Virus record (IMG/VR): IMGVR_UViG_3300037297_000066
Span: 310,001 to 374,000 of that record
Reading direction: 5' to 3' (one strand)
DNA: 64,000 nt
Positions within the stretch are counted from its first letter, which is position 1. Every line of letters begins with the position of its first letter. The position numbers were made by a program, and so were the translations under genes. The notes beneath the pieces are model-generated. The model ran no database searches. It worked only from the letters and a program-made list of their open reading frames with translations, and was not told the DNA's origin. Shown here piece after piece: positions 456 to 58,747 of this stretch.

Positions 456-668
456 ATGCCTTCCTCTACGAAGCCTAATAGCTTGATGTTCTGCACGAGC
501 TGCAGGGGCAGACTAGAAATGAGTGGGAGGGAGCCTTACCGCTACGTGTGCTCCGATTGTGGGCAGAACTTCATGGCTGTGATGCAGCTTGTGCCTGTGG
601 CTTCGAATCAGGAGTCACCCCAACTTCCAGGAGAGTCTGTTGCTGGATCGGGTGAAGGAACAAGCTGA
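456..668 (+). CDS. Small zinc-ribbon protein
   Basis: 70 aa; CTSC-x15-CSDC; overlaps the start of holB. Confidence 0.6.
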   Translation: MPSSTKPNSLMFCTSCRGRLEMSGREPYRYVCSDCGQNFMAVMQLVPVASNQESPQLPGESVAGSGEGTS

Positions 669-1572
669 AGGCGTTCGCTTCCTGCGTAGGGTAGTTGACG
701 GTAACCTGACCACCCCTCTCATGCTAGTGGGGCCGGAGGGTACCGGCCGCAGGTTATCCGTTCTTGAAGCTGCTAGAGAGATGTTTGGAGGAGGCGAGCA
801 TCACGATCTTTTGATCGACGAAGGGAAGCACCCTGATTTGAAGGTGCTGGTTCCAGAATCTGGCAAGGATCTGGGAGTGGATGCTGTTCGAGGGCTGTTG
901 AGGGAGACGATCTTCTTTCCCGTTGACGCTCCCAAGAAGTTTTTCGTTATCGATGAGGCTGACCGAATGACTCCAGCAGCGTCCAACGCTTTGCTGAAGA
1001 CGTTGGAGGAGCCGCCAAGCACGTGTCGCTTCTTTCTTCTGGTGCAGTCTACTGACCGAGTTTTGCCAACGATTCGGTCTCGTTGCGGCGTTGTTCAGTA
1101 CCGTCAGTTGTCTGAGTCGTTGGTGATGAGTCACCTTAGTCGTTTCGAGAAGGACGGCACTAAAGCACTTGTCTACGCTCGCTTAGCAGAAGGCTCTATA
1201 GGAAGAGCCGTTTCCCTATGGGGCTCCGGTCGTCTCACTTTACGAGATCAAGTCTTGGGGCTCTTAAAAACAGGGTTATCAGGCGACACGTCTTCTCTCT
1301 TTTCGACTGTGGATGGGCTACAGTCAGAACTCCCGTTGGGTCTTCGTTTTCTAGAACACGTAGTTCAAGATCTGCTGATGCTTCCCTACTGTTCAGAGCG
1401 TTTGACCAACCTAGATGTCGTCGATTCTCTGACGGATCTAAGGGCTCAAATGGGGGACGCTCGTTTGAGGAAGCTTCGAGAGGGTTTGAAGTCTTTGTTG
1501 GGTAAGACCTACCTGACGACGTTGCCCTTTCATACCAAGACGTTTTTGGCTGACGTGTTGGAGGGCGGTTGA
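640..1572 (+). CDS. holB: DNA polymerase III delta' (clamp loader) subunit
   Basis: Degenerate Walker A GPEGTGRR, FFVIDEADRMTPAASNALLKTLEEPP, TIRSRC; start moved from 589 to TTG 640, which has GGAG upstream. Confidence 0.9.
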   Translation: MLDRVKEQAEGVRFLRRVVDGNLTTPLMLVGPEGTGRRLSVLEAAREMFGGGEHHDLLIDEGKHPDLKVLVPESGKDLGVDAVRGLLRETIFFPVDAPKKFFVIDEADRMTPAASNALLKTLEEPPSTCRFFLLVQSTDRVLPTIRSRCGVVQYRQLSESLVMSHLSRFEKDGTKALVYARLAEGSIGRAVSLWGSGRLTLRDQVLGLLKTGLSGDTSSLFSTVDGLQSELPLGLRFLEHVVQDLLMLPYCSERLTNLDVVDSLTDLRAQMGDARLRKLREGLKSLLGKTYLTTLPFHTKTFLADVLEGG

Positions 1573-2543
1573 TGGCTAAGCCCTTCCCGTTCCACGTGGC
1601 CTATGGAGAAGACACCTTCATGTTGGGGCGTCACCTGGCATTCGGAAGGTCTTTCCGGAACCGAGACATAATTCAGCTGGACGGGGCTGTTGTTGGTGAA
1701 GAGGAACTGGTTTCTGCCTGTGAGTCCTTTTCGCTTGGGGGTCAAGATCGGGTAGTTGTTTTGGACAACGCCCAGAAGGTGAAAGGCAAGGAACTATCTC
1801 GGTACATCGAGGAGAAGGAGCGTAAGGATCTGGCTACGATTCTGGTGGCTGTGGTTCGAGCCAAGTCACTCCCTGATCCGTGGTCTAAGCTTGGCTCCAA
1901 AGGTCAAACGGTTTGTTTTCAGGAGTTGAAGCCGTGGTCGGAGGAGCCTGCCAAAAAACTGATGGCAGAGGAAGCAGAGCGTTTGGGGATCAAGTTGAGT
2001 GTGGAAGTACCGGGGATCCTTTGGAGATCCCTAGGGAACAACTCCGGGCGCATCTGCAACGAGCTCGGCAAGCTTTCGGTGTTGGTAGGCCCCCGAGGCA
2101 CTGTCAAAAAAGAACACCTGAAGCTGGTGTTGTCTGCGATACCTTCGGTAGACAGTTACCAGGCGACTCAACTAGCTGAAGCAGCCTTTAGTTTCAAGGT
2201 CAACACGGCCATGAAGAAGGCGTCTTCGTTGTACAAACATCAGGGGGAAGGGGTTTCTGTGCCTATCGTCTCTGCTTTGATGAAGCAGGCAGAGCGCTAC
2301 TATGTTGCTCGTAGGATGCTTGATTCGGGGGACACCGTAGGGATAGTGGCCCATCGGTTTGGGATGGGGGGTAGTCGAGAGTTTTTCTTCAAGAGAGATG
2401 TGCTGCCTAGTGTGCAGAAGCGAACTGCCGTTTCTCTTTTGAAGCAGATGAAATTTCTATGCGAACTAGATGTGAAGGTAAAGGGACCGGCTCACTCGAA
2501 AAGGTCCTTGGTCGAGCTGGCAGTGTTGTCCATCACCTCATGA
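1572..2543 (+). CDS. holA: DNA polymerase III delta subunit (HolA-like)
   Basis: YGED at the N-terminus, NELGKL lid motif, C-terminal ELDVKVKG...LVELAV typical of delta; ATG overlaps the holB stop. Confidence 0.8.
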   Translation: MAKPFPFHVAYGEDTFMLGRHLAFGRSFRNRDIIQLDGAVVGEEELVSACESFSLGGQDRVVVLDNAQKVKGKELSRYIEEKERKDLATILVAVVRAKSLPDPWSKLGSKGQTVCFQELKPWSEEPAKKLMAEEAERLGIKLSVEVPGILWRSLGNNSGRICNELGKLSVLVGPRGTVKKEHLKLVLSAIPSVDSYQATQLAEAAFSFKVNTAMKKASSLYKHQGEGVSVPIVSALMKQAERYYVARRMLDSGDTVGIVAHRFGMGGSREFFFKRDVLPSVQKRTAVSLLKQMKFLCELDVKVKGPAHSKRSLVELAVLSITS

Positions 2544-21218: not shown

Positions 21219-22613
21219 ATGTGGGACGTTAAGTATCGTCCAAAGAAGTTCTCTGACGTGCTGGGCCAACCCGGCATCGTACAGGTGTTGAAGGCTAGGC
21301 TGAAGAACGGCACTGCTCTAGACACTTCGTACATTTTTTCCGGGGGTCATGGGATCGGCAAAACCACCCTGTCCAGGATTTTGGCCAGGGCTTTGCTTTG
21401 TCATGATCTTCAGCCTGAGGGAGAGCCCTGCAATCAGTGTGACAACTGTCGAGACATCTTGAGCGAGACCTCTCATGCGTTTCAGGAGCTGGATGCTGCC
21501 AGCTCGGGGACCATAGACAACGTACGTTCGATGGTCGAGTCTCTGCCCTTTGCTGTGCAAGGGGCTGCCAAGAGGATCATCCTCTTCGATGAGATGCATC
21601 GCATGTCTCGGGATAGCCAAGACGTGTTGCTGAAGCCTATCGAAGACAAGCGTTTGGTGGGCATCTTCTGCACTACTGAACCTACCAAGATCCGAGCTAC
21701 TATTCAGTCCAGGTGTGAGGAGTTCACGCTAAGGCCAATCACTCGGGAGGACATCCTGGCTCGAATGAAGAGGGTCTTAGAACAAGAGGGGGTCACCTAC
21801 GATGAAGACGCTGTGAACATCGTCATCGACTATTCAGGGGGACATGTACGGGATGTGCTCAACCGGCTGGAGATGATGGGACAGCTTGGGGAGATCACCC
21901 AGGAGTCTGTTCGAGAGTATCTGAACCTGTCTGTGGTCTCGCTTTACTATGAGATCTTGTTGTCTCTGGGGGACCCTGCTGTCTCTTTGCGGTTAGTAGA
22001 TCAGGCTGTGGATCGAGTGGGGGCGGATCAGGTGACCTCTGGTTTGGCCGAAGCTGCTATGAGCTCCTATCGGCTGGCTCACAAGATGCATTCTGACTTC
22101 GTGTATGCCGATCGAAAACTGGCAGTGAAGGTTTACGAGGTCTACGGGGATGCTGTGGTTCAGTTAGCTAGGTATTTCCTGAGGGATCGTAAGGTAACGG
22201 CTCCAGGGTTGTTGTGTGATGTGGTCTTGTGTGCCGGAGGGGTCCCTTCTGCGGTAGCTGAGAGCACTTCTCAGGTGGTCGTGAACGCCCCTCAGAGCGC
22301 CCCTGTTTCGGTTTCTTTACCAGAGGCCCCTACTGCTCCTACTGCCTCCAATCCTGTTTCTGAGCCAACCTCAGCCGTTGCTGCTGTGTCTGGTTCTGAG
22401 ACCTTGAAACCAGAAAAAGTCCCTGCTCCTGCCACTAGAACGTTGACTAGTTTGGATCACAAGGCAATATCTCCTGACATGCCCCGAGGTAGTTGTCCTG
22501 AGGAGCCTTTGGTGATCCCCAAAGGGACCAGTGATCGTGCCAATGACCTTTTGACTCCGGCGGAATGGCGACAGGCTTTTCAGAAGCTCTACTTGAGTCA
22601 AAATCGTGGGTGA
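21219..22613 (+). CDS. dnaX: DNA polymerase III gamma/tau subunit
   Basis: KYRPKKFSDVLGQ, GGHGIGKTT, zinc module C..EPCNQCDNC, ELDAAS, FDEMH, TIQSRC, GGHVRD; Pro/Ala/Ser linker. Confidence 0.95.
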   Translation: MWDVKYRPKKFSDVLGQPGIVQVLKARLKNGTALDTSYIFSGGHGIGKTTLSRILARALLCHDLQPEGEPCNQCDNCRDILSETSHAFQELDAASSGTIDNVRSMVESLPFAVQGAAKRIILFDEMHRMSRDSQDVLLKPIEDKRLVGIFCTTEPTKIRATIQSRCEEFTLRPITREDILARMKRVLEQEGVTYDEDAVNIVIDYSGGHVRDVLNRLEMMGQLGEITQESVREYLNLSVVSLYYEILLSLGDPAVSLRLVDQAVDRVGADQVTSGLAEAAMSSYRLAHKMHSDFVYADRKLAVKVYEVYGDAVVQLARYFLRDRKVTAPGLLCDVVLCAGGVPSAVAESTSQVVVNAPQSAPVSVSLPEAPTAPTASNPVSEPTSAVAAVSGSETLKPEKVPAPATRTLTSLDHKAISPDMPRGSCPEEPLVIPKGTSDRANDLLTPAEWRQAFQKLYLSQNRG

Positions 22614-24423
22614 ATGGTTAGTTATAGAGCTGTCCTCTCGGTGTGAGGGGGAGGACCCTAGAGTCCTTCAGGAGGCTTTGACGCGCTTGGTCAAAACCTC
22701 TGAGGTGTTCGTTCCTGCGGCCGTCACAGAGATAGGGGACGATGTTGTCTACTCATATCTCTTGGAGGGGTATGCCTTCGTTCGTCGAGACAGCCCTGAT
22801 TCCACTTATTTGAGATTGGAGAACAGCCGTTACGTAGAGTCTGTTTTGACGGAGCCTCGGGGTTCAGGGGGGAGTCGTCGGTTGTCTACTGTATCAGAAG
22901 AGGACATAGACAGGTTTCGGCGACAGGTGAAGGCTATTTCAGATCAGGGGATCAGCGTTGGAGACACCGTCACAATCACCTCTGGTCCCTATCGGAATAT
23001 AGAGGCTACGGTAGTCGAGGACATCGCAGAAGAGGGGATGGTCCAGGTGCACGTGAAGCTGCGCTCCAAGCAGTCTCTGGTGACGTTGCCACGAGGCTTC
23101 TTGAGGGTAGTAAAGAGGGCCCCTCTTTCCCCGGTCTACAATCGGATGGCTTCCCTAAGGGCCTGGTCCACGATGGCTACGGCCCTCTTGGAGTGGGAGG
23201 AAGGCGATTGGAGCCAGGTCCAAGCGGCGTATGACCGGTACCATCGACTGCACCAGTGGTCCAACAAAGGGAGGCTTCTCTACTCCTTCCTAGGGTCCAA
23301 AGGAATTTTGGACCATTCTTATCGGGATTTGCAGCGGAGACTGCAACGTTTGTCTCGTGTAAAGGCAGCGGCTAGAAAGGCCAGTAGGATCTGTAATCTC
23401 ATAGCCTTTTCTAGGGGGTGGGCGGGACCCCGTGATTTGGAGTCTCTTCAGAACAAACTGATGGATTTGGCGTGGCTGGATGACGTGATGCGTCGAGTTC
23501 AGGAGCTCCATCGTAGCTACAATGTACTGAATCGTAGGTTAACCCATAGGAACGAGAAGCGTAAGATGGTTCAGAACGTGTTGATTGATGGGCACAACTT
23601 GGCTTTTCGGTGCATGTATGCCCCTGGAATGTCCAGGCTGTCTGATAGTCAGGGACGTCCTACGGGGCTTATTGTGGGGTTCCTTCGTAGCCTGGGGGCT
23701 CTTCGCAAGAAATACCCCACGGCCCGCTTTTGGGTTACTTGGGACGGCTCTTCGCAAAGGCGCAAGTCGTCATTTGCTGACTACAAGGCAAATCGTCCAG
23801 TTAGGGAGGCCGATGAGTCTGGGTTTGACCAAATGGCTTATGTACGCAAAGTTATTGTGTATTTAGGGGTGACTCAAGCCTTCAACCCAGAAGAAGAAGC
23901 GGATGACGTGATTGGGGCTTTGGTGAAGGGGGACTTGGTTTCCCAGAAGAACGTGATCTTTTCCTCCGACAAAGATCTCCTACAGTTGGTTACACACGAC
24001 ACTTTCCTGTTGATCCCGGCCATCGGAAGTAGAAAGGAAATTTTGTTCGAAGGTCCCGAAATCGTTGAAGAATATATGGGGGTTCCACCTGGAAAAATGG
24101 TGGAGTTTAGGGCTCTGTGTGGGGACCCTAGTGACAACATTCCTGGGGTGCCTAGAGTTCCAAAGAAGGTATTGCGAGCATTGATTCAGGCCCATGGTTC
24201 GGTGGATGGCATATACAAATCTGGATTGGCTGGTTTGACAAGAAATCAATATGATCGCTTGCGTTCCGCCGAACCTCAGGTGAGAATTAACCTAGAACTG
24301 ATGGCGTTAGTTGACGTCGAAGTCTCTCTCACGTATCCAGATGTAAACAGCAGTGTTGCTCAGCAGTTGATGGAGGAAGTGGGGATCAAACCCCAACCCA
24401 TCCTTAAAGCGTTTGGATTGTAG
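22606..24423 (+). CDS. Fusion of a NusG-family NGN+KOW domain, a helical linker and a 5'-3' exonuclease (PolA N-terminal/FEN-like)
   Basis: aa 1-170: WLVI, EVFVP, LLEGYAFV, VGDTVTITSGPY; from aa 321: VLIDGHNLAFR, WDG, YKANR, EEADDVIG, SSDKDLLQL, GDPSDNIPGVP. Confidence 0.85.
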   Translation: MGEWLVIELSSRCEGEDPRVLQEALTRLVKTSEVFVPAAVTEIGDDVVYSYLLEGYAFVRRDSPDSTYLRLENSRYVESVLTEPRGSGGSRRLSTVSEEDIDRFRRQVKAISDQGISVGDTVTITSGPYRNIEATVVEDIAEEGMVQVHVKLRSKQSLVTLPRGFLRVVKRAPLSPVYNRMASLRAWSTMATALLEWEEGDWSQVQAAYDRYHRLHQWSNKGRLLYSFLGSKGILDHSYRDLQRRLQRLSRVKAAARKASRICNLIAFSRGWAGPRDLESLQNKLMDLAWLDDVMRRVQELHRSYNVLNRRLTHRNEKRKMVQNVLIDGHNLAFRCMYAPGMSRLSDSQGRPTGLIVGFLRSLGALRKKYPTARFWVTWDGSSQRRKSSFADYKANRPVREADESGFDQMAYVRKVIVYLGVTQAFNPEEEADDVIGALVKGDLVSQKNVIFSSDKDLLQLVTHDTFLLIPAIGSRKEILFEGPEIVEEYMGVPPGKMVEFRALCGDPSDNIPGVPRVPKKVLRALIQAHGSVDGIYKSGLAGLTRNQYDRLRSAEPQVRINLELMALVDVEVSLTYPDVNSSVAQQLMEEVGIKPQPILKAFGL

Positions 24424-24432
24424 GAGTGTGAT

Positions 24433-25104
24433 ATGGCTGCTTCTGGGTATGTGATCCCTGTAAATCCTCACGAGCTTGCAAGTAGGGTTCCCACCCACGA
24501 TCCTTGGTACGACGAAGAGAATACGTTCGAAGACGATGACGAAGAGGAGGATGGTTTTTCTGAAGTCGATGAAGAGGAAATGGCTGCTTTGGTAGCCACC
24601 ATTGACTACGAGAGCCAGATAGCCCCTTTTTTGGATCGTATTCCCGAGCGTGAAGCAGACCTGATCTATCTCTACTTCATCCAACACAAACGACAAGCGG
24701 ATATAGCCACCATTTTTGGAGTGACACAGGCGGCTATCTCCTATCGATTGGACCGGGGTATCAAGCGAATCAAGTTCCTCTTGGACATCCCTCAAGTGAC
24801 GGAAGACGACCTTCGGGCTGACCTCCCTGAAGTGTTCCCGGACTCGATGGATATCGATATCTTGGTGGGTATGTGGAAGACAACCTGCCAATCGGAAGTA
24901 GCCTCTCAACTCCGGTTAACACAGGGCCGGGTGCGCCACCGGTTCTTCAAAGCTGTCCGGGTGTTGCAGGAGGCGGCCGAACAGAACGAGAGGTTAAAGC
25001 CTTACAGTCAGATTTTCTCGAAAATTTCAAGCAAGCGGTTCAACATTCTGAGGGAAGTTAAATTACCACAGTGGTCAAATCGGGGTGGTGACGAGTGCTT
25101 GTGA
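24433..25104 (+). CDS. Protein with two sigma70 region-4-like helix-turn-helix domains
   Basis: IPEREADLIYLYF...RQADIATIFGVTQAAISYRLDRG and CQSEVASQLRLTQGRVRHRFFKA; acidic N-terminus; no region 2 recognised. Confidence 0.75.
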   Translation: MAASGYVIPVNPHELASRVPTHDPWYDEENTFEDDDEEEDGFSEVDEEEMAALVATIDYESQIAPFLDRIPEREADLIYLYFIQHKRQADIATIFGVTQAAISYRLDRGIKRIKFLLDIPQVTEDDLRADLPEVFPDSMDIDILVGMWKTTCQSEVASQLRLTQGRVRHRFFKAVRVLQEAAEQNERLKPYSQIFSKISSKRFNILREVKLPQWSNRGGDECL

Positions 25105-25124
25105 GTTTCACTGGAGTTGCAGTA

Positions 25125-25172
25125 GGCCCGGAGGCTGGGGGGTGAAGGCCCCTAAGGCCGGGTTTTCTTTTA
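25125..25172 (+). terminator. Possible intrinsic terminator at the end of the replication module
   Basis: GC-rich CCCGG...GGGG...CCCC...CCGGG pairing followed by TTTTCTTTT. Confidence 0.4.
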
Positions 25173-25174
25173 TG
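25161..25174 (+). promoter_or_regulatory. Putative late-promoter motif GGTTTTCTTTTATG
   Basis: Near-identical to GGTTTCTTTTATG at 58735-58747; both are intergenic and upstream of virion genes. Confidence 0.5.
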
Positions 25175-35055: not shown

Positions 35056-38000
35056 GTGCAGCCGATCTGGGCCACCAAAAACGATTTGGAGTCGGAGAAC
35101 GAGGAAACTGAACGTCTCGTTCGAGAAGCTCCTAAGAAAAAACCCCCTCGTCGAGACCGGCGACGGGAACGGGTGAACCCTGATCGAGACCTTGATACGC
35201 AAGGGGATCCGGACCTGAAGAATGATCCGGATCTGAGCCTAAACTACAAGGACGTGGGGGGCTCCGTATCGGAGCGGGTGGCCTTTAGGTTTGTTGCCAA
35301 AAAAGACCGTATCAAGGTCCGGCGTAAAGACACGGGTACCGTTGTCTACGTCACCAAGGAGAAGCTCAGGGAAGAAGGCGGTAAATACGAACTGGTCAAA
35401 CCAAAGGAGGATCCTCCTTGGGGGGGCAAGGGAGCCCAGCCGGGGGAGACCGATACAGAGCCTCCTTGGAAGGAAAAAGGGCCTCCTGAGAAGCCTGGTA
35501 AGGAGCCCCAGAAGCCTTCTGAGAAGCCTCCCGTTGAGGAGGGGGCCCAACCCGAGAAAGAGGAGAAGCCTGCTGAAGGGGGCCCTGAGGAGCCTGGAAA
35601 AGGGGGAGAGAAGCCTGCCGAGGGAGAGCATACTGAAGAGAAGCCGTCGGCCGCTGAGGCTGAAATCGACAAGCTGATCGAGCAGGACCCTTCATTCCAA
35701 AAAGCCCTCTTGTCGGTGCAGGAAAAGGCTAATGCCTACGCTCAGAAATCAGAGGGCATTCTCAAGGAGTTGGAGGGCCTGGAGAAGGATAGCAGCCCCG
35801 AAGCTGCTGAGCGAAAGAAGGCTCTAGTTGATGAGCTCAATTCTGGTCAGGATGAGCTGAATTCCTACATGGAGGCTGTCCAGTCTAGAGTGGACAGAGC
35901 TCAGGCCAAACAAGATTTGGCGCAACAAAAGGCCGATAAGGAGCAGGCAGAGGCCGAGGCTGAGGCAGCCAAATCAGAGGCTGAAAAGGCTGGGATCAAA
36001 GATCCTCAACGGCCTGAGCCTACTGAAGCGGAACGAATGGAAGCGATGGAGATGGTGGTGGACACCTTCCCTCCAGACATCGCTGCCGACATCATTGCCA
36101 AAGGGTACCATCCCTCAGATCTTCAGAGCATGGCGGCTTCCTATGAGGCTGCCAAGGTTTCTCCCATTCCCAAGGGAGATTTGAAGGACTTCGCTGCCAA
36201 GGTTGGGAAGATCTACCAAATTGACCCCAGCAAGGTGAAGCCTCCCAAGACCTGGGAGAAGGAAGGGCGTGAGGTCCCCTTTGAGGAGTTGAGTCCCAAA
36301 GAGCAGTCGGAGGCTATGCGTCAGCACCAGATGCAGACGGTGGCCATGAGTCTGGCAGCCAAAGACCAGCTTACGGAGGCCCTGACTCAAAGAACTCGCT
36401 CGGGGAAAGCTCAGATTCCTGAGGAACTGGCCGGTACCCTAGCTGACTTCATGCTGTCTCCAGAGGGAAAGGGTCGGGAGGATCAGGCTAAGAATCTCGC
36501 CTCCCAAACCTTCAAGATTACTAGGGAAAAGGGCGAAGCAGAGAACATCAAGGATGGCGTAGTCAAGAAGCTTTTGGGGTCCTTGCCGAAGGAAGCTCAG
36601 CAAATCGCTTCAGGCTTCTTGCAGGCCAATGACTATCTGGTAGCTCGGGAGAAATTTCTCGACTCTGGGGAGATTTCTGAGCATCAGAGCCCGGGGGATA
36701 TTGTTAGTGGTTTCCGAGACTTGGACAGTTACTTCCAGAAGAGATCCAAGTTGTATCCTGGGGGGAATGACCAGCATGCGGGGAAGCTGCTGCAGAGCCA
36801 GATTCGAACTCGTCTGAAGGAACTGGACCAGCGCAAGTACGGAGAAGTCCGAAAGCGTTTGGATGCCATTGCTGCAGATGAGTACGACATCGCTGAAGGT
36901 AAGTGGAGAAAGGCGCGTAAAGCCTGGGAAGTAAAGAAGAAAAAGCACCAGCAGAAGGTCAGAGAGTACGACAACGCTCATCTGATCACAGACTGGAAGA
37001 ACCTTCCTGAAGGGCATCCTGGAGAGTTTACAGAGGCTCCCCCTGAGCCCCCGAAGAAGCCTCTTCGGTATGATTTGGTTCGAGGGAAGCGTCCTCGGGT
37101 TTGGGAGGAGCAGTTCCGGCGCATGGGCCAGAAGGTAGCTTCTCGATATCTCAAATCCTTTTATCCCTGCTCTGTACCGATGGACTCGAATTCTAGGACA
37201 GGTGCCTACCATGGGGTAGAGCCTGCGGACAACTCCCCCCCAGAAGGGTATGCCGGCTGGCAGCAAGCTCATCAGAGAGATCTAGGAGAGTCTGATTTCG
37301 ACATCATCTTGCAGAGTGCTCGGGAGTGGATGAAAAGTCCTGTTCTTTCCAAGGACATCGACGGTTACCTGCCTGACATGCAGCTTCGGGCGGCCTTGGA
37401 TTTGGCTATTCAGAGCAGCCCCTACAATCGAGCCATCAATCCTCAGACCTACAACATCTTGTTGGCTCGGTTGGCCAACATCCCTCCTGAGGAGTTCCTG
37501 GGGCAAACACTTCGTTCGGCCACAGTGTTGGTGAGGACTGCTGGAAGCAGCTACGTCGTCGAGAAGATGAGCCTAGTTGTTTATGGAAAGGGTCCTTTCA
37601 ATATCGATGTGATTCGAGCCATTGAAGGGCAGTACTTTCAGTACCGGGACGAGGAAGGGAATGTCCGGGATGATGGGTACGCTCATGTCGATGATGTGAA
37701 ATACGGACGAGCTCTTCCCCGGATGCAGGAACTGCAAGGCTTCGTGCCTGAAGGCTCTCTCAACATCTCTTATCCCAAAGGAGCCTCTGCTGAAGCCTTC
37801 AAGGCTGTGCAGGCGGCTTGTCGCAAACATAAGCTCCAGGTCGAAAAGGCCAAACCCGGATACAAGCCGAGCTTTCGGAAAATGCCGGGATCAAAAACCC
37901 GAAGGGCGCAATCCAGCAAAGGTGAGGACAGCATGAACAAGCAAGCGGCCAATGGCATTCTGGGTCGTCTCGATCGGCTCGCCGACAACATCCAGAACAA

Positions 38001-40557: not shown

Positions 40558-41979
40558 ATGCGTGAGAGAACCACTTGGAGCCTAGAAGCTATTGCCGCCA
40601 GGACTGCAGCGGAGCAGGAGCGTACCGCTGACGATCCTCGGGCAATGAATCAAGACCACCATTCTCAGCAACCGTCGGCAGACCAGTACGAGATCGGTGG
40701 GCCCAGCGACTTCGCAGAGGATGTGACTCCTCCCAACTGGAAGGACGAGCAGGCTGGTGGCGAGACGAAGAGGGATGAGATCGGACTTCCCCAGTTCGAC
40801 TCGGACACCTTCAAGCAAGGCGCCTTGGACGAGGAGCATCTGCTCAAGAAGTCCGAGGTCTGTTCGAAGGTGGCCTCTTTGATCCTTGGCGAGGCCACAG
40901 AGGCTGCTGTCGAAGATCAGGCTGTCGAGTTGATGGACCTCTCCGATGCCACTCTTCTGTCGATGTACGCTCGTGTACTCGAAGCCAAGGGTCAGGTTCC
41001 TCCCCAGTTCTTGAAGAACAAGGGCGACGACAAGGGCGACGACAAGGGCGACGACAAGGGTCAAGAGCAAGACAAGGAAGCTGCCCAGCAGAAGCAGCAG
41101 CAGGACCAAGCCGAAGACCAGGAAGGTCAAGAAGGCAAGGAAGCTGCCCAGCAGAAGCAGCAGCAGGACCAAGCCGAAGACCAGGAAGGTCAAGAAGGCA
41201 AGGAAGCCGCTCAGCAGAAGCAGCAGCAGGACCAAGCCGAAGACCAGGAAGGTCAAGAAGGCAAGGAAGCTGCTCAGCAGAAGCAGCAGCAGCAGGGTGA
41301 AGGCGAGGAAGGCGACCAGGAGCAAGGCAAGGAAGCCGAGGCTCTCAAGCAGGCTTCCGAGGCTCTGACCCTTTTGGCTCAGCAGCAACCGTTCCAGGCT
41401 CAGGCTCAGCAGTTGCTATCGCTGGTTCAGCAACAGTTGGCCCAACAGCAGCAGCAGTCTTGCTCGACTCCGATGTCGCAGCAACAGCAGCAGGCTCAGC
41501 AGCAGATGCAGCAGGCTCAGCAGATGATGGAGCAGGCTCAGCAGATGATGCAGCAAGCCCAGCAGCCGCAGCCGCAACAGTCGATGGAGGACGAGCTCCT
41601 CCAGCAGTTGCAGCAGGAGCCTGGTCAGGATGACCTGATGGAAGAGACCATCGAGATGGAAAGCCCTTCGATGGATGTCGGTGAGATCGCTCTGGACCAG
41701 CAGGATGCAGAGACTCTCGGACAGCTCTTCGCTTCCAATCCGGAAGTTCAGCAGGCCAGGCAGGCTCAGGCTCTGGAGACCGGGGTGCCTCAGGCTCCCT
41801 CAGCTCCAATGACTCGCACTGCTTCGGTCAATCCGTCCCTGCGAACTGTTGGCACTCAGCCGACAGGTGGGGTCTCCCAATTGGGAGGTGCTGCTGCTGC
41901 TGACTCCGGCTCCCAGGATACGGACAAGCTTTCAGCTCTCTGGAATTCGGCTCCTGACGTCAAGGATGTTTTCCGCTGA
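40558..41979 (+). CDS. Capsid scaffolding protein, Gln-rich with tandem repeats
   Basis: 473-aa low-complexity helical protein between protease and capsid genes; AAGGAG RBS. Confidence 0.7.
   Translation: MRERTTWSLEAIAARTAAEQERTADDPRAMNQDHHSQQPSADQYEIGGPSDFAEDVTPPNWKDEQAGGETKRDEIGLPQFDSDTFKQGALDEEHLLKKSEVCSKVASLILGEATEAAVEDQAVELMDLSDATLLSMYARVLEAKGQVPPQFLKNKGDDKGDDKGDDKGQEQDKEAAQQKQQQDQAEDQEGQEGKEAAQQKQQQDQAEDQEGQEGKEAAQQKQQQDQAEDQEGQEGKEAAQQKQQQQGEGEEGDQEQGKEAEALKQASEALTLLAQQQPFQAQAQQLLSLVQQQLAQQQQQSCSTPMSQQQQQAQQQMQQAQQMMEQAQQMMQQAQQPQPQQSMEDELLQQLQQEPGQDDLMEETIEMESPSMDVGEIALDQQDAETLGQLFASNPEVQQARQAQALETGVPQAPSAPMTRTASVNPSLRTVGTQPTGGVSQLGGAAAADSGSQDTDKLSALWNSAPDVKDVFR
41018..41060 (+). repeat. 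12-bp tandem repeat, about 3.6 copies (ACAAGGGCGACG; encodes KGDD)
   Basis: Read directly from sequence. Confidence 0.9.
41073..41292 (+). repeat. 63-bp tandem repeat, about 3.5 copies (encodes KEAAQQKQQQDQAEDQEGQEG)
   Basis: Units start at 41073, 41136, 41199 and 41262 and are nearly identical. Confidence 0.92.
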
Positions 41980-42701: not shown

Positions 42702-43580
42702 ATGAATCAGGTTTCCAACGCTGTCAAGCAGCAGATCATCAGCGAGTACATCAAGACCGCAGCTGGCCGTGCCAAGCTGGCAGCCTCGATGACCCAACCT
42801 CTGCGTCTCCGCAGAGACTACACCGCCGTCGGCCGCAAGACCTTCTTGGTCGAAGAGCTGCCTGATGGCGCACTCCCCATCTACGACAAGGACCCCGAGG
42901 TCACAGCGTACGTCGTGGGCGAGGAAGGCGAGAACATCGTCGCCATCCAGAAGCCACGTCGTGTGATCTTCCCGTTGTTCGAGATCGCCTCGAATCCCGA
43001 GATCCCCTTGACCCAGATCAAGGAGCGTCGTTTCGATCTGATCGAACGATCCCAAGACCTGGCCAAGGCTCAGATTCAGGCGGCCGAGGACGAGCGGGTC
43101 TTCGCCGTTCTGGACTCCATCGCCGTATCGGGCTTCGACACGCTTCCGGGTGGAACAAACCCGGATGTGAACGTCGTTGCTCCGATCAGCCCGTCGGTGC
43201 TGGCTGACGCCTTCGCTGAAGTGGAGAGGCACGACCTTCGGGTCGCTCGCATCTACATGAATGCGGTGGACTACGCCGACATCCGCAAGTTCGGTCGGGA
43301 CATCCTGGACATCGAGAGCCAGGCCACCCTGCTGAAGACGGGTCTGCAGGCAACCCTCTGGGGCGCTCAGATCATCACGAGCCGCCTGGTTCCGGCCGGG
43401 TACGTGTATGTCTGTGCAGAACCGGAGAACTTCGGCCGGTTCCCCGTTCGGACCGAACTTACCGTTCTGTCGGCAGACGATCCGAAGGCTCGAACCATCG
43501 GGTTCAGCTGCTTCCAGAACGTCGGAATCGGTGCCTTCAACCCCCGTGGGTTGGTCCGCATCGTGGTCACTCGACTGTAG
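42702..43580 (+). CDS. Major capsid protein (HK97-like fold)
   Basis: 292 aa; GRKTFLVEELPDGALPIYD, spine-helix-like DLIERSQDLAKAQIQAAEDERVF, LWGAQIITS, G+V; strong GGAGG RBS; followed by a hairpin. Confidence 0.8.
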   Translation: MNQVSNAVKQQIISEYIKTAAGRAKLAASMTQPLRLRRDYTAVGRKTFLVEELPDGALPIYDKDPEVTAYVVGEEGENIVAIQKPRRVIFPLFEIASNPEIPLTQIKERRFDLIERSQDLAKAQIQAAEDERVFAVLDSIAVSGFDTLPGGTNPDVNVVAPISPSVLADAFAEVERHDLRVARIYMNAVDYADIRKFGRDILDIESQATLLKTGLQATLWGAQIITSRLVPAGYVYVCAEPENFGRFPVRTELTVLSADDPKARTIGFSCFQNVGIGAFNPRGLVRIVVTRL

Positions 43581-43828: not shown

Positions 43829-44494
43829 ATGCATGCGTCTTGGAAGAAGATCCTCCAAGGGGAGTTCGAGAAGCCCTACTTTCAGTCTTTGATAGAGTTC
43901 GTCAATAAGGAGCGTAGGGAGGGCGTGGTCTTTCCTCCTCCGGGGACGCTTTTCAATGCCTTTCAAGTCCCCTACGAAGAGGTCAAGGTTCTGATCCTAG
44001 GGCAAGATCCTTACCCCAATGCCGGACAGGCTTACGGTTTCTGCTTTTCGGTGCAGCCTGGCGTCAAGCCTCCCCCTAGCCTTGTGAACATCTACAAGGA
44101 GCTGGAGGGGGACCTGGGGATCAAGCCTCCAAAGCACGGATGCCTTCAGCATTGGGTGGACCAGGGGGTCTTCCTTCTCAACGCTGTATTGACGGTCCGA
44201 GCTCACCAGTCGGGTTCTCACCAAGGCAAGGGGTGGGAGCAGTTCACAGACAAGGTCATACGGCTCCTAGACGCCCGTCAGGAGCCTGTTGTCTTCGTTC
44301 TATGGGGCAGGTATGCCCGGAACAAGAAGGACCTCATAGACTGCCAGAGGCACCTTGTATTGGAGGCTGCTCATCCCTCTCCAATGTCGGCTAGGAACGG
44401 GTTCTTCGGAAGCCGCCCCTTCTCTCAGATCAACGCAGCCTTGGAGTATTCGGGGCTGGATCCTATAGACTGGCAACTACCCCCGAAGGTCTGA
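43829..44494 (+). CDS. ung: Uracil-DNA glycosylase, family 1
   Basis: ILGQDPY, GFCFSV, PPSLVNIYKEL, QGVFLLN, VFVLWG, HPSPMS. Confidence 0.96.
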   Translation: MHASWKKILQGEFEKPYFQSLIEFVNKERREGVVFPPPGTLFNAFQVPYEEVKVLILGQDPYPNAGQAYGFCFSVQPGVKPPPSLVNIYKELEGDLGIKPPKHGCLQHWVDQGVFLLNAVLTVRAHQSGSHQGKGWEQFTDKVIRLLDARQEPVVFVLWGRYARNKKDLIDCQRHLVLEAAHPSPMSARNGFFGSRPFSQINAALEYSGLDPIDWQLPPKV

Positions 44495-58710: not shown

Positions 58711-58734
58711 GGGTTCGAGTGGAGGGGGCGCTGA

Positions 58735-58747
58735 GGTTTCTTTTATG
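58735..58747 (+). promoter_or_regulatory. Putative late-promoter motif GGTTTCTTTTATG
   Basis: Matches 25161-25174; lies just after a terminator. Confidence 0.5.

What the first reader, a model, noticed from the sequence alone, without database searches (positions are those of the whole stretch)
22606..24423. NusG-family transcription factor fused in frame to a 5'-3' (flap) exonuclease
Seen: one 605-aa ORF with no internal stop. It has a clear NGN+KOW domain (aa 1-170), a ~150-aa helical linker, and a complete PolA-N/FEN-type nuclease with its acidic motifs (DG, WDG, EEADD, SSDKD, GDPSDNIPG). Established: NusG-family proteins ride on elongating RNA polymerase. FEN-type enzymes degrade 5' ends of DNA and of RNA in hybrids. 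The T5 D15 5'-exonuclease is needed for T5 late expression. Inference: tethering the nuclease to RNAP could couple late transcription to replication intermediates, remove R-loops at replication-transcription conflicts, or act as a torpedo-type terminator. The gene sits exactly at the replication/late boundary, next to a sigma4-like gene. I know of no described protein with this architecture but cannot search.
Basis: partly seen in the sequence, partly recalled or inferred. Interest (0 to 1): 0.82.

Follow-up and report, generated by a model that had tools for sequence, protein, structure and literature searches.

The report
Phage NusG factor fused to nuclease
A large uncultivated phage encodes one protein that joins an RNA-polymerase-riding NusG-type module to an apparently active flap endonuclease; the fusion is real and common in this phage lineage and is not described in the papers I could search, but it arose from two neighbouring genes and has come apart again several times, so whether the tether itself matters is still open.

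Summary
Window 22606-24423 (+) is one 605-aa ORF with four parts: NusG-type NGN (aa 1-112), KOW (118-170), a fast-evolving four-helix domain (176-315), and a Pol I-type 5' nuclease/FEN (321-605) with all nine active-site acidic residues invariant. It is not an assembly error. The identical protein occurs in independent assemblies, and more than 100 full-length relatives exist.

All relatives share the module Toprim - metallopeptidase - DnaX - [NusG-like, FEN] - sigma4-like protein. The pair is fused in 52 of 65 loci and adjacent but separate in 13. A tree suggests that separate genes were ancestral. It shows one main fusion, at least three later fissions and one independent short fusion. Deeper relatives, including a published 485-kb huge phage, have DnaX - NusG-like - sigma4-like with no FEN. 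The invariant partners are therefore the two transcription proteins, and FEN is one of several cargos.

A conserved promoter-like motif follows the sigma4-like gene. It probably heads a late operon of about 33 kb.

Best reading: a phage NusG paralog for late transcription that carries the phage's FEN on a flexible tether. Functional coupling is plausible but unproven. New variant of a known kind; interest about 0.6.

The parts
22606..24423 (+). NusG-like/FEN fusion gene, 605 aa. The GTG start overlaps the DnaX stop (GTGGGTGA). The TAG stop overlaps the SD (TAGGAG) of the next gene.
   Evidence: identical protein in independent assemblies
22606..22941 (+). NGN domain (aa 1-112), NusG-type, with the conserved W4 and G55-Y56-x-F58 signature
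22957..23115 (+). KOW domain (aa 118-170), five-stranded barrel
23131..23550 (+). Four-helix linker domain (aa 176-315). It evolves fast (27% mean pairwise identity) but keeps W187, W290, R297 and a conserved last helix. It stays with the NGN-KOW gene when the gene is split. No detectable homologues.
23566..24420 (+). Pol I-type 5' nuclease/FEN domain (aa 321-605). Acidic residues D328, D380, E430/E431, D433, D434, D455, D457, D507 and D510 are invariant.
23566..23568 (+). In-frame ATG (M321) at the exact position where the separate FEN gene starts in split relatives. Possible internal start; the SD is weak in this window.
21219..22613 (+). DnaX-like clamp-loader subunit gene, always immediately upstream
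24433..25104 (+). Sigma region 4 protein (223 aa): sigma4 domain at about aa 60-118, plus a second conserved helical domain at aa 124-199. No sigma2 detected. It is the invariant downstream partner of the NusG-like gene.
25124..25165 (+). Strong hairpin (dG about -24 kcal/mol) followed by a T-run: terminator-like end of the replication/regulatory transcription unit
25161..25173 (+). Conserved motif GGTTTTCTTTTAT, 28 nt upstream of the GTG of the first post-sigma gene (25201). Candidate late promoter element.
58734..58746 (+). Second intergenic copy of the motif (AGGTTTCTTTTAT). Suggests the next transcription unit starts about 33 kb downstream.

Best explanation
The gene encodes a phage NusG paralog that carries the phage's Pol I-type flap endonuclease as cargo. 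SHOWN: the N-terminal NGN-KOW module belongs to the NusG/Spt5 superfamily. The C-terminal domain is a complete two-metal FEN. The two are joined by a poorly conserved helical domain of about 140 aa, whose position relative to the other domains is not fixed in the model. The gene is the second-last gene of the replication module and is translationally coupled to DnaX upstream. It is followed by a sigma4-domain protein, then a hairpin plus a conserved promoter-like motif that heads the structural genes. INFERRED: NGN docks on the clamp helices of the (host) RNA polymerase, as all characterised NusG/Spt5 proteins do, and displaces host NusG on phage templates. Together with the sigma4-like partner it drives processive, termination-resistant transcription of the late operon of about 33 kb. 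Because FEN is tethered, it is held near the upstream or downstream DNA of the elongation complex. There it can cut 5' flaps and RNA:DNA hybrids: R-loops behind RNAP, Okazaki or primer ends, or nicks met when RNAP and replisomes share the heavily replicating, uniformly oriented genome. This would link late transcription to the replicating state of the DNA. A free FEN for ordinary Okazaki maturation may also be made from the internal start at the domain boundary. The fusion arose from two adjacent genes and is advantageous rather than essential.
For: Domain identity. Conservation of the fused form: more than 100 full-length relatives at 45-67% identity; 58 of the top 150 50%-identity representatives; 52 of 65 loci; one fused clade of 44 rows with support 94/85, plus an independent linker-less fusion in L148. 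NGN-KOW and FEN are equally conserved (56% and 60% mean pairwise identity). The window has only one FEN and one NusG-like module. Link to RNAP: a module 45% identical to this NGN-KOW is fused to a complete sigma factor (regions 2 and 4) in P0184, and to an HTH_3 domain in P0191. The sigma4-like gene is the invariant downstream neighbour. Boundary and long operon: hairpin plus conserved motif about 35 nt before the first late gene in 11-14 of 50 distinct relatives; the motif recurs in the window only at 58.7 kb and once inside a gene. Internal start: ATG or GTG in 15 of 18 fused relatives and an SD-like core in 10 of 18, against 11% of controls. Precedent for a hybrid-removing nuclease needed for long late transcripts in large phages: Rhc of Chimalliviridae (bioRxiv 10.64898/2026.10.01.755736).
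Against: At least three independent secondary fissions are tolerated (L162; L130/L164; L131+L132). The deep lineages keep the two genes separate (L002, L137, L138, L140, L145, L147). Still deeper relatives, and the published 485-kb phage LR745208.1, have no FEN in the slot at all. The whole six-gene module is syntenic, so adjacency is not specific to this pair. pTM is 0.51 and the linker has low pLDDT, so the model shows no fixed inter-domain geometry. NGN and KOW scores for the single sequence are below the Pfam cut-offs. No RNAP binding, nuclease activity or expression data exist. The host and its RNAP are unknown.
Confidence: 0.5

Rival explanations
1. Functionally neutral (or merely co-expression-optimising) fusion. 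A late-transcription NusG paralog and the replicative Okazaki-processing FEN are neighbours with overlapping stop and start codons. A small indel merged them, and the long flexible helical linker lets each half do its own job independently. There is no mechanistic coupling of nuclease and RNAP.
For: Separate adjacent genes lie on the deep branches. There were at least three later fissions and one independent fusion, so the junction is evolutionarily labile. Split forms use a 4-nt ATGA overlap, so one frameshift converts between the two states. FEN is absent from the slot in L170, L172 and LR745208.1. The linker evolves fast (27% identity). The internal start signal is retained.
Against: The fused state has persisted across a clade that has diverged to about 35-40% identity, in 40 of 44 rows. 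A second, linker-less fusion arose independently (L148). FEN always sits between the two transcription genes and never elsewhere in the module. The same NGN-KOW module repeatedly acquires other cargos (sigma, HTH, unknown repeat domains), which suggests it works as a delivery adaptor.
Confidence: 0.33
2. Replisome-tethered FEN. The NGN-KOW module has been re-purposed to bind a replication component (clamp, clamp loader, SSB or primase) rather than RNAP, so the protein is simply the phage's Okazaki-fragment nuclease with a replisome anchor.
For: The gene is translationally coupled to the DnaX-like clamp-loader gene and lies in a module with primase. The phage encodes three clamp-loader subunits. 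The NGN is divergent. The C-terminus is conserved as P-[IL]-L-x-x-F-F-G, loosely like a PIP box.
Against: No NGN-KOW protein is known to bind anything but RNAP through its NGN domain (established knowledge of the NusG/Spt5 family; PMC7819879). A close homologue of the module is fused to a sigma factor. FEN-less relatives keep NusG-like next to the sigma4-like gene. No sliding-clamp gene was detected in the window or in the 10-kb flanks. The C-terminal helices are modelled at pLDDT about 90, as part of the FEN fold.
Confidence: 0.08
3. Torpedo-type terminator or RNA-decay factor. The RNAP-tethered 5'-3' exonuclease degrades nascent RNA from its 5' end to terminate or down-regulate transcription.
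For: The architecture would put a 5' nuclease near the RNA exit channel, where the NusG KOW domain normally sits (inference).
Against: The domain is closest to Pol I 5' nuclease, FenA and T5 D15. These are structure-specific enzymes that act on duplex or flap substrates, not processive single-stranded-RNA exonucleases like Xrn or RNase J (established knowledge). The partner genes and the long downstream operon argue for promoting late transcription, not stopping it.
Confidence: 0.04
4. Assembly or sequencing artefact: a lost stop or frameshift joins two genes in this one contig only.
For: Split versions exist in relatives. Reads could not be inspected.
Against: The identical 605-aa product is found in several independent assemblies. 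Dozens of diverged relatives are fused, with the frame maintained through a variable linker.
Confidence: 0.01

Closest known systems
Specialised NusG paralogs (RfaH, LoaP, UpxY, ActX/TaA)
   Same: NGN plus KOW architecture. The gene sits next to or at the head of a very long operon that it presumably services. Expected to displace housekeeping NusG on RNAP and make transcription processive.
   Different: NCBIfam scores are far below the cut-offs for RfaH, LoaP and UpxY (13-25 bits against 100-145). It is phage-encoded. It has an extra helical domain of about 140 aa and an enzymatic cargo after KOW. It is paired with a sigma4-domain protein. No recruitment site (ops-like) was identified.
Bacterial and phage Pol I-type 5' nucleases (Pol I N-terminal domain, M. 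smegmatis FenA, T5 D15)
   Same: Fold (TM about 0.7-0.8), the H3TH, and the full set of two-metal-site acidic residues. Probable role in removing RNA primers and 5' flaps.
   Different: Those enzymes are free-standing or fused to a DNA polymerase. None is fused to a transcription factor. The 2017 PIN/FEN superfamily catalogue mentions no NusG or KOW architecture, and no BFVD viral structure spans both halves.
Phage T4 replication-coupled late transcription (gp55, gp33, gp45 sliding clamp)
   Same: Concept: late transcription factors are encoded with, and functionally tied to, the replication machinery. Promoter recognition is minimal and -10-like. A sigma4/flap-binding type partner is involved (own knowledge of T4).
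   Different: No clamp gene or clamp-binding tails could be demonstrated here. The coupling device would be a NusG-like elongation factor plus a nuclease, not a sliding clamp.
Rhc (RNase H-clamp) of Chimalliviridae jumbo phages (bioRxiv 10.64898/2026.10.01.755736)
   Same: A hybrid-degrading nuclease fused to a nucleic-acid-tracking module in a very large phage. It is needed for both replication and transcription of blocks of late genes, and is interpreted as R-loop removal.
   Different: Rhc has an RNase HI-type nuclease and a clamp-derived DNA-binding domain, and it partners with the phage DNA polymerase. There is no NusG module and no FEN. It is not homologous.
Eukaryotic Spt5 as a recruitment platform
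   Same: NGN-KOW core followed by additional C-terminal modules that bring RNA- and DNA-processing enzymes to the elongating polymerase (PMC3382729; profile hits to Spt5 KOW domains).
   Different: Spt5 recruits enzymes non-covalently through its CTR and multiple KOW domains. Here the enzyme is part of the same polypeptide.

Membership tests
NusG/Spt5 superfamily | N-terminal NGN domain (PF02357 fold) | tested here: met
   The single sequence is sub-threshold (14.7-18 bits against 22.2). The family profile hits full-length NusG structures at E 5e-12 to 3e-7. 33 of 50 family members match PF02357. Foldseek to NusG gives E about 1e-9 over 177-183 columns.
NusG/Spt5 superfamily | KOW domain directly after NGN | tested here: met
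   KOW at aa 118-170: Pfam 18-20 bits against 22.3 for the window protein and above threshold in relatives. phmmer to NusG KOW structures. Five-stranded barrel in the model.
NusG/Spt5 superfamily | Binds the RNAP clamp (beta' clamp helices) of elongation complexes | not testable with these tools
   No complex prediction or biochemistry was available. Indirect support only: a homologous module is fused to a sigma factor.
Housekeeping NusG / RfaH / LoaP / UpxY subfamilies | Score above the NCBIfam curated cut-off for the subfamily | tested here: not met
   TIGR00922 31 bits against 135.7; LoaP 25 against 125; UpxY 23 against 100; RfaH 14 against 144.5.
Pol I-type 5'-3' exonuclease / FEN | 5_3_exonuc_N (PIN-like) plus H3TH domains above the Pfam cut-offs | tested here: met
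   105.9 bits against 34.3 and 52.5 against 40. Foldseek to FenA, Taq, ExoIX and T5 D15.
Pol I-type 5'-3' exonuclease / FEN | Complete set of acidic residues for both metal sites | tested here: met
   D328, D380, E431, D433, D434, D455, D457, D507 and D510 are invariant in 38 sequences and align with the Taq and M. smegmatis Pol I active site. This is not the one-site Xni/ExoIX class (NF007017 64 bits against 261).
Pol I-type 5'-3' exonuclease / FEN | Flap / 5' exonuclease / RNase H-like activity | not testable with these tools
   Needs an enzyme assay.
T4-type clamp-coupled late transcription | Phage sliding clamp plus clamp-binding tails on the transcription factors | tested here: inconclusive
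   Three clamp-loader subunits are present, but no clamp gene was detected in the window or its flanks. The conserved C-terminal P-[IL]-L-x-x-F-F-G is modelled as part of the FEN fold. The sigma4-like protein has no such tail.
Rhc (RNase H-clamp) | RNase HI domain fused to a clamp-derived DNA-binding domain | tested here: not met
   The nuclease class and the partner domain are both different.

The most novel reading that the evidence does not exclude
A transcription elongation factor that carries its own nuclease. In a widespread clade of huge phages, a NusG paralog docks on RNA polymerase and holds a flap endonuclease at the elongation complex, so that transcription of a late operon of about 33 kb is directly coupled to removal of R-loops, primers or flaps on replicating DNA. 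More generally, the phage NGN-KOW module would be an RNAP-docking adaptor that delivers interchangeable cargos (FEN, sigma, HTH, unknown domains).
Probability: 0.35. Interest if true: 0.82.

Novelty: new variant of a known kind. Interest (0 to 1): 0.62.

Why it matters
NusG/Spt5 is the only transcription factor family conserved in all cellular life. Its bacterial paralogs are known to act by excluding Rho and recruiting ribosomes, not by carrying enzymes. A covalent NusG-nuclease would be a new way for a virus to tie late gene expression to DNA replication and to manage R-loops and replication-transcription conflicts on a very large genome whose genes, in the roughly 84 kb examined, all lie on one strand. 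It would also give a simple, testable model for the old observations that phage late transcription depends on replication-type nucleases. The family also exposes a phage NusG-paralog clade, not described in the papers I could search, that is always paired with a sigma4-domain protein. That pair is a candidate late-transcription switch for huge phages even if the FEN tether proves incidental.

Tried and rejected
(1) Single-sequence scan of genome contigs found nothing. The alignment-based scan found mostly ordinary Pol I FEN domains, plus two family members: L001 (fused, in a Lysinibacter-labelled MAG) and L002 (separate, Paceibacterota MAG). The host was not established.
(2) Clamp-binding tail idea: the C-terminal P-[IL]-L-x-x-F-F-G is conserved. 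However, no clamp gene was found, and the tail is modelled as packed helices of the FEN fold at pLDDT about 90. Kept only as a weak lead.
(3) A terminator after the sigma4-like gene as a universal feature: found in 19 of 50 distinct loci against 14% of control windows. It is enriched but not universal. The generic promoter/terminator scan gave counts at chance level.
(4) Linker homology: the ESM Atlas gave only noise (scores of 0.51 or less). A weak LINK-HMM hit to the SbcC-like ORF probably reflects coiled-coil composition.
(5) C-terminal extensions of FEN-less relatives as decayed FENs: rejected. They have no FEN signal even with relaxed thresholds and form their own families.
(6) The sigma part of P0184 as a homologue of the window's sigma4-like protein: rejected.
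(8) T5 D15 requirement for late genes: not verifiable in the searchable library. Treated as recalled knowledge.
(9) LR756508.1 huge phage: its FEN is free-standing and is not next to the module.
(10) Walking upstream by exact protein look-up failed for one ORF.
Full report
1. OBSERVATION

Window 22606-24423 (+) is a single 605-aa ORF with a GTG start and no internal stop. The C-terminal half is an unambiguous Pol I-type 5' nuclease. Pfam finds 5_3_exonuc_N at aa 325-489 (E 2e-30) and the H3TH domain at aa 493-579 (E 7e-14), both well above cut-off. NCBIfam aligns aa 325-581 with the N-terminus of DNA polymerase I (E 1e-48).

The N-terminal 170 residues score just below the Pfam NusG and KOW cut-offs. 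They nevertheless align end to end with TIGR00922 nusG (E 2e-7) and with PHROG 6386 'transcription antiterminator' (E 5e-10). A 50-sequence profile of this module (A3) hits full-length bacterial NusG structures: T. maritima at E 5e-12, and E. coli NusG from RNAP complexes at E 3e-7. It also hits Spt5 KOW domains. Of the 50 members, 33 match PF02357.

An AlphaFold2 model built on 38 relatives (mean pLDDT 82, pTM 0.51) shows these parts:
- NGN, aa 1-112
- a five-stranded KOW barrel, aa 118-170
- four long helices, aa 176-315, pLDDT 55-80
- a FEN domain, aa 322-605, pLDDT above 90

Foldseek against the PDB matches the C-terminal part to M. smegmatis FenA, a plastid exonuclease, Taq Pol I, ExoIX and T5 D15 (E 1e-16 to 1e-12). 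It matches the N-terminal ~180 residues to NusG as seen in RNAP complexes (6gov_G, 9a56_B; E about 1e-9).

All nine acidic residues of the two-metal site are invariant in 38 relatives: D328, D380, E431, D433, D434, D455, D457, D507 and D510. They align with the Taq and M. smegmatis Pol I active site.

2. NOT AN ARTEFACT, NOT UNIQUE

The identical protein is encoded on two IMG/VR contigs from different metagenomes (108 kb and 437 kb). It is also present in Logan, ENA and JGI assemblies. A word-seeded search returned at least 120 full-length relatives (600-650 aa, 99-100% coverage, 45-67% identity). JGI's pipeline already names some of them '5'-3' exonuclease/transcription antitermination factor NusG'.

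An exhaustive phmmer search with the N-terminal 320 residues found 285 representatives at 50% identity clustering. I classified the top 150 with my own domain HMMs:
- 58 are NGN-KOW-(linker)-FEN
- 10 are NGN-KOW-linker only
- 85 are NGN-KOW alone or with other extensions

3. CONTEXT

The window is part of a large phage genome. Its first 25 kb encode the following:
- delta'- and delta-like clamp-loader subunits
- class II RNR
- NAD-dependent ligase
- a RecD2-like helicase
- a RuvC-like resolvase
- RecA
- SbcC/SbcD-like proteins
- a PD-(D/E)XK nuclease
- a Toprim primase-like protein
- a metallopeptidase
- a DnaX-like subunit

After the fusion gene come a sigma4-domain protein and then structural genes, including terminase, HK97-type capsid and a beta-helix fibre. 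Same-strand phage genes continue for at least 10 kb on both sides.

Many related contigs are 300-530 kb. The only GenBank phage with the N-terminal module is a 485-kb 'uncultured phage' chromosome. The lineage is therefore probably one of huge phages. The host is unknown.

The fusion gene's GTG overlaps the DnaX stop codon, and its TAG overlaps the Shine-Dalgarno sequence of the sigma4-like gene.

4. COMPARATIVE ANATOMY OF THE LOCUS

I surveyed 84 fetched loci with domain HMMs. Every locus that has the NusG-like module has the order Toprim - metallopeptidase - DnaX - [NusG-like, FEN] - sigma4-like. The pair is fused in 52 loci and adjacent but separate in 13.

There are two kinds of separate form:
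- NGN-KOW-linker (298-380 aa) followed by FEN (289-349 aa) with a 4-nt ATGA overlap: L130-L132, L162, L164/L165, seen in independent samples.
- A short NusG-like gene (167-224 aa) followed by FEN (304-334 aa), in distant lineages: L002, L137, L138, L140, L145, L147.

L148 is a linker-less fusion of 474 aa.

A maximum-likelihood tree of the concatenated NGN-KOW and FEN parts (52 rows, midpoint root only) gives this picture:
- The short separate forms sit on the deep branches on both sides of the root.
- The long fused forms make one clade of 44 rows (support 94/85).
- That clade contains at least three independent fissions.
- L148 is an independent fusion, on a long branch whose placement is uncertain.

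Deeper relatives found through the N-terminal search have DnaX - NusG-like - sigma4-like with no FEN between them: L170, L172, and LR745208.1. Other members of the NGN-KOW clade carry an HTH_3 domain or unknown repeat domains that are not decayed FENs. In P0184 a complete sigma factor (regions 2 and 4) sits N-terminal to a module 45% identical to the window's.

Conclusion: the invariant partnership is NusG-like plus sigma4-like. FEN is one of several cargos or neighbours. The fusion is derived, long-lived and reversible.

5. REGULATORY SIGNALS

Directly after the sigma4-like gene lies a strong hairpin (about 25124-25165, dG -24 kcal/mol) with a T-run. Overlapping it is the motif GGTTTTCTTTTAT (25161-25173), 28 nt before the GTG of the next gene.

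The exact 12-mer GTTTYCTTTTAT occurs once per locus in eight distinct related phages. In each case it is on the + strand, shortly downstream of the sigma4-like gene. The 9-mer core is found in 14 of 50 distinct loci, usually about 35 nt upstream of the next start codon. There are only 30 occurrences in 952 kb of locus sequence.

In the window the motif recurs only at 58734-58746 (intergenic) and once inside a gene at 37156. I read it as a late-promoter-type element, which is an inference. It implies a late transcription unit of about 33 kb, the kind of operon for which specialised NusG paralogs are used elsewhere (PMC7819879).

The partner protein has a sigma4 domain (SigF/FliA region 4, E 4e-7; TM about 0.8) plus a second conserved helical domain with no match. 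No sigma2 was detected.

6. INTERNAL START

M321 (ATG 23566) is exactly where the FEN gene starts in split relatives. In 18 distinct fused relatives the aligned codon is ATG or GTG in 15. An SD-like core lies upstream in 10 of the 18, against 11% at control M/V codons. This count is partly confounded by Gly and Lys codons at that position.

The window's own upstream sequence (GAGAAG) is a weak SD. A free FEN product in addition to the fusion is therefore plausible but unproven.

7. MECHANISM

Shown: the domain identities, the intact active site, the conservation, the synteny and the boundary position.

Inferred:
- NGN binds the RNAP clamp helices, which is the defining property of NusG/Spt5.
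- The protein acts with the sigma4-like partner on the long late operon.
- The tethered FEN is held near the elongation complex, where it can process 5' flaps and RNA:DNA hybrids on replicating DNA.

The Chimalliviridae Rhc protein is an RNase HI fused to a clamp-derived domain. It is a non-homologous precedent for a tethered hybrid-removing nuclease that is needed for blocks of long late transcripts.

Confidence levels:
- that this is a genuine NusG-family/FEN fusion: about 0.95
- that NGN binds RNAP: about 0.75
- that the tether is functionally meaningful: about 0.4-0.5

The main rival explanation (0.33) is a neutral merger of translationally coupled neighbours that then act independently. 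A replisome anchor (0.08), a torpedo terminator (0.04) and an artefact (0.01) are less likely, for the reasons given in the Rival explanations section.

8. NOVELTY

Full-text searches found no description of a NusG-nuclease fusion or of this phage NusG clade. The two main NusG-evolution papers mention none. The 2017 PIN/FEN superfamily catalogue does not mention NusG or KOW. No BFVD viral structure spans both halves.

Both parts belong to well-known families, and automated annotation has already seen the combination. I therefore rate it a new variant of a known kind, with interest 0.62.

Noticed in passing
window 25161-25173 and 58734-58746; L087, L094, L098, L101, L102, L105, L106, L107, L135 just downstream of the sigma4-like gene: Conserved motif GG(G)TT-TYCTTTTAT about 35 nt upstream of the first gene after the sigma4-like gene in many relatives. 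Candidate late promoter of this phage lineage. In the window it follows a strong hairpin.
   Followed up: partly
window 24433-25104: The downstream partner is not a complete sigma factor. It has a sigma4 domain (about aa 60-118), an acidic N-terminal tail and a second conserved helical domain (aa 124-199) with no structural match. It is invariantly paired with the NusG-like gene.
   Followed up: partly
P0184 on L166:3612-5237: In a different phage-like contig (Ku, DEAD-box helicase neighbours), a complete sigma factor (regions 2 and 4) is fused N-terminally to an NGN-KOW module 45% identical to the window's. This sigma-NusG fusion is also not described in the papers I could search.
   Followed up: partly
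P0191, P0199, P0207, P0217, P0218, P0235, P0242, P0248, P0255: Other members of the phage NGN-KOW clade carry C-terminal HTH_3 or unknown extension domains (some internally repeated) in the same genomic slot. The module seems to accept variable cargos.
   Followed up: partly
L082:7296-9998, L094:3278-5992, L115:3221-5959: The DnaX-like gene upstream of the fusion carries an intein (LAGLIDADG) in several relatives (about 900 aa instead of about 465). A terminase-like gene in L082 has one too.
   Followed up: no
window 589-2543 and 21219-22613: Three clamp-loader subunit genes (delta'-, delta- and DnaX-like), but no recognisable sliding clamp or DNA polymerase in the 64-kb window or in the 10-kb flanks.
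   Followed up: partly
L168:4017-9096 (upstream of the window) and L169:17247-18257 (downstream): Auxiliary genes typical of very large phages: VWA protein, RtcB RNA ligase, GroEL-like chaperonin and HNH endonuclease upstream; an actin-like 'Volactin' family gene downstream.
   Followed up: no
window 41069-41292: Three tandem 63-nt repeats (96-100% identical) encoding a Lys/Glu/Gln/Ala-rich repeat inside ORF 40558-41979, possibly a scaffold or decoration protein.
   Followed up: no
window 43829-44494: A uracil-DNA glycosylase superfamily gene sits among the structural genes, right after the HK97-type capsid gene (42702-43580).
   Followed up: no
L173 (LR745208.1:414365-426862): A published but unannotated 485-kb uncultured huge-phage genome carries DnaX (628 aa) - NusG-like (207 aa) - sigma4-like (197 aa) without FEN. 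This ties the module to huge phages.
   Followed up: yes
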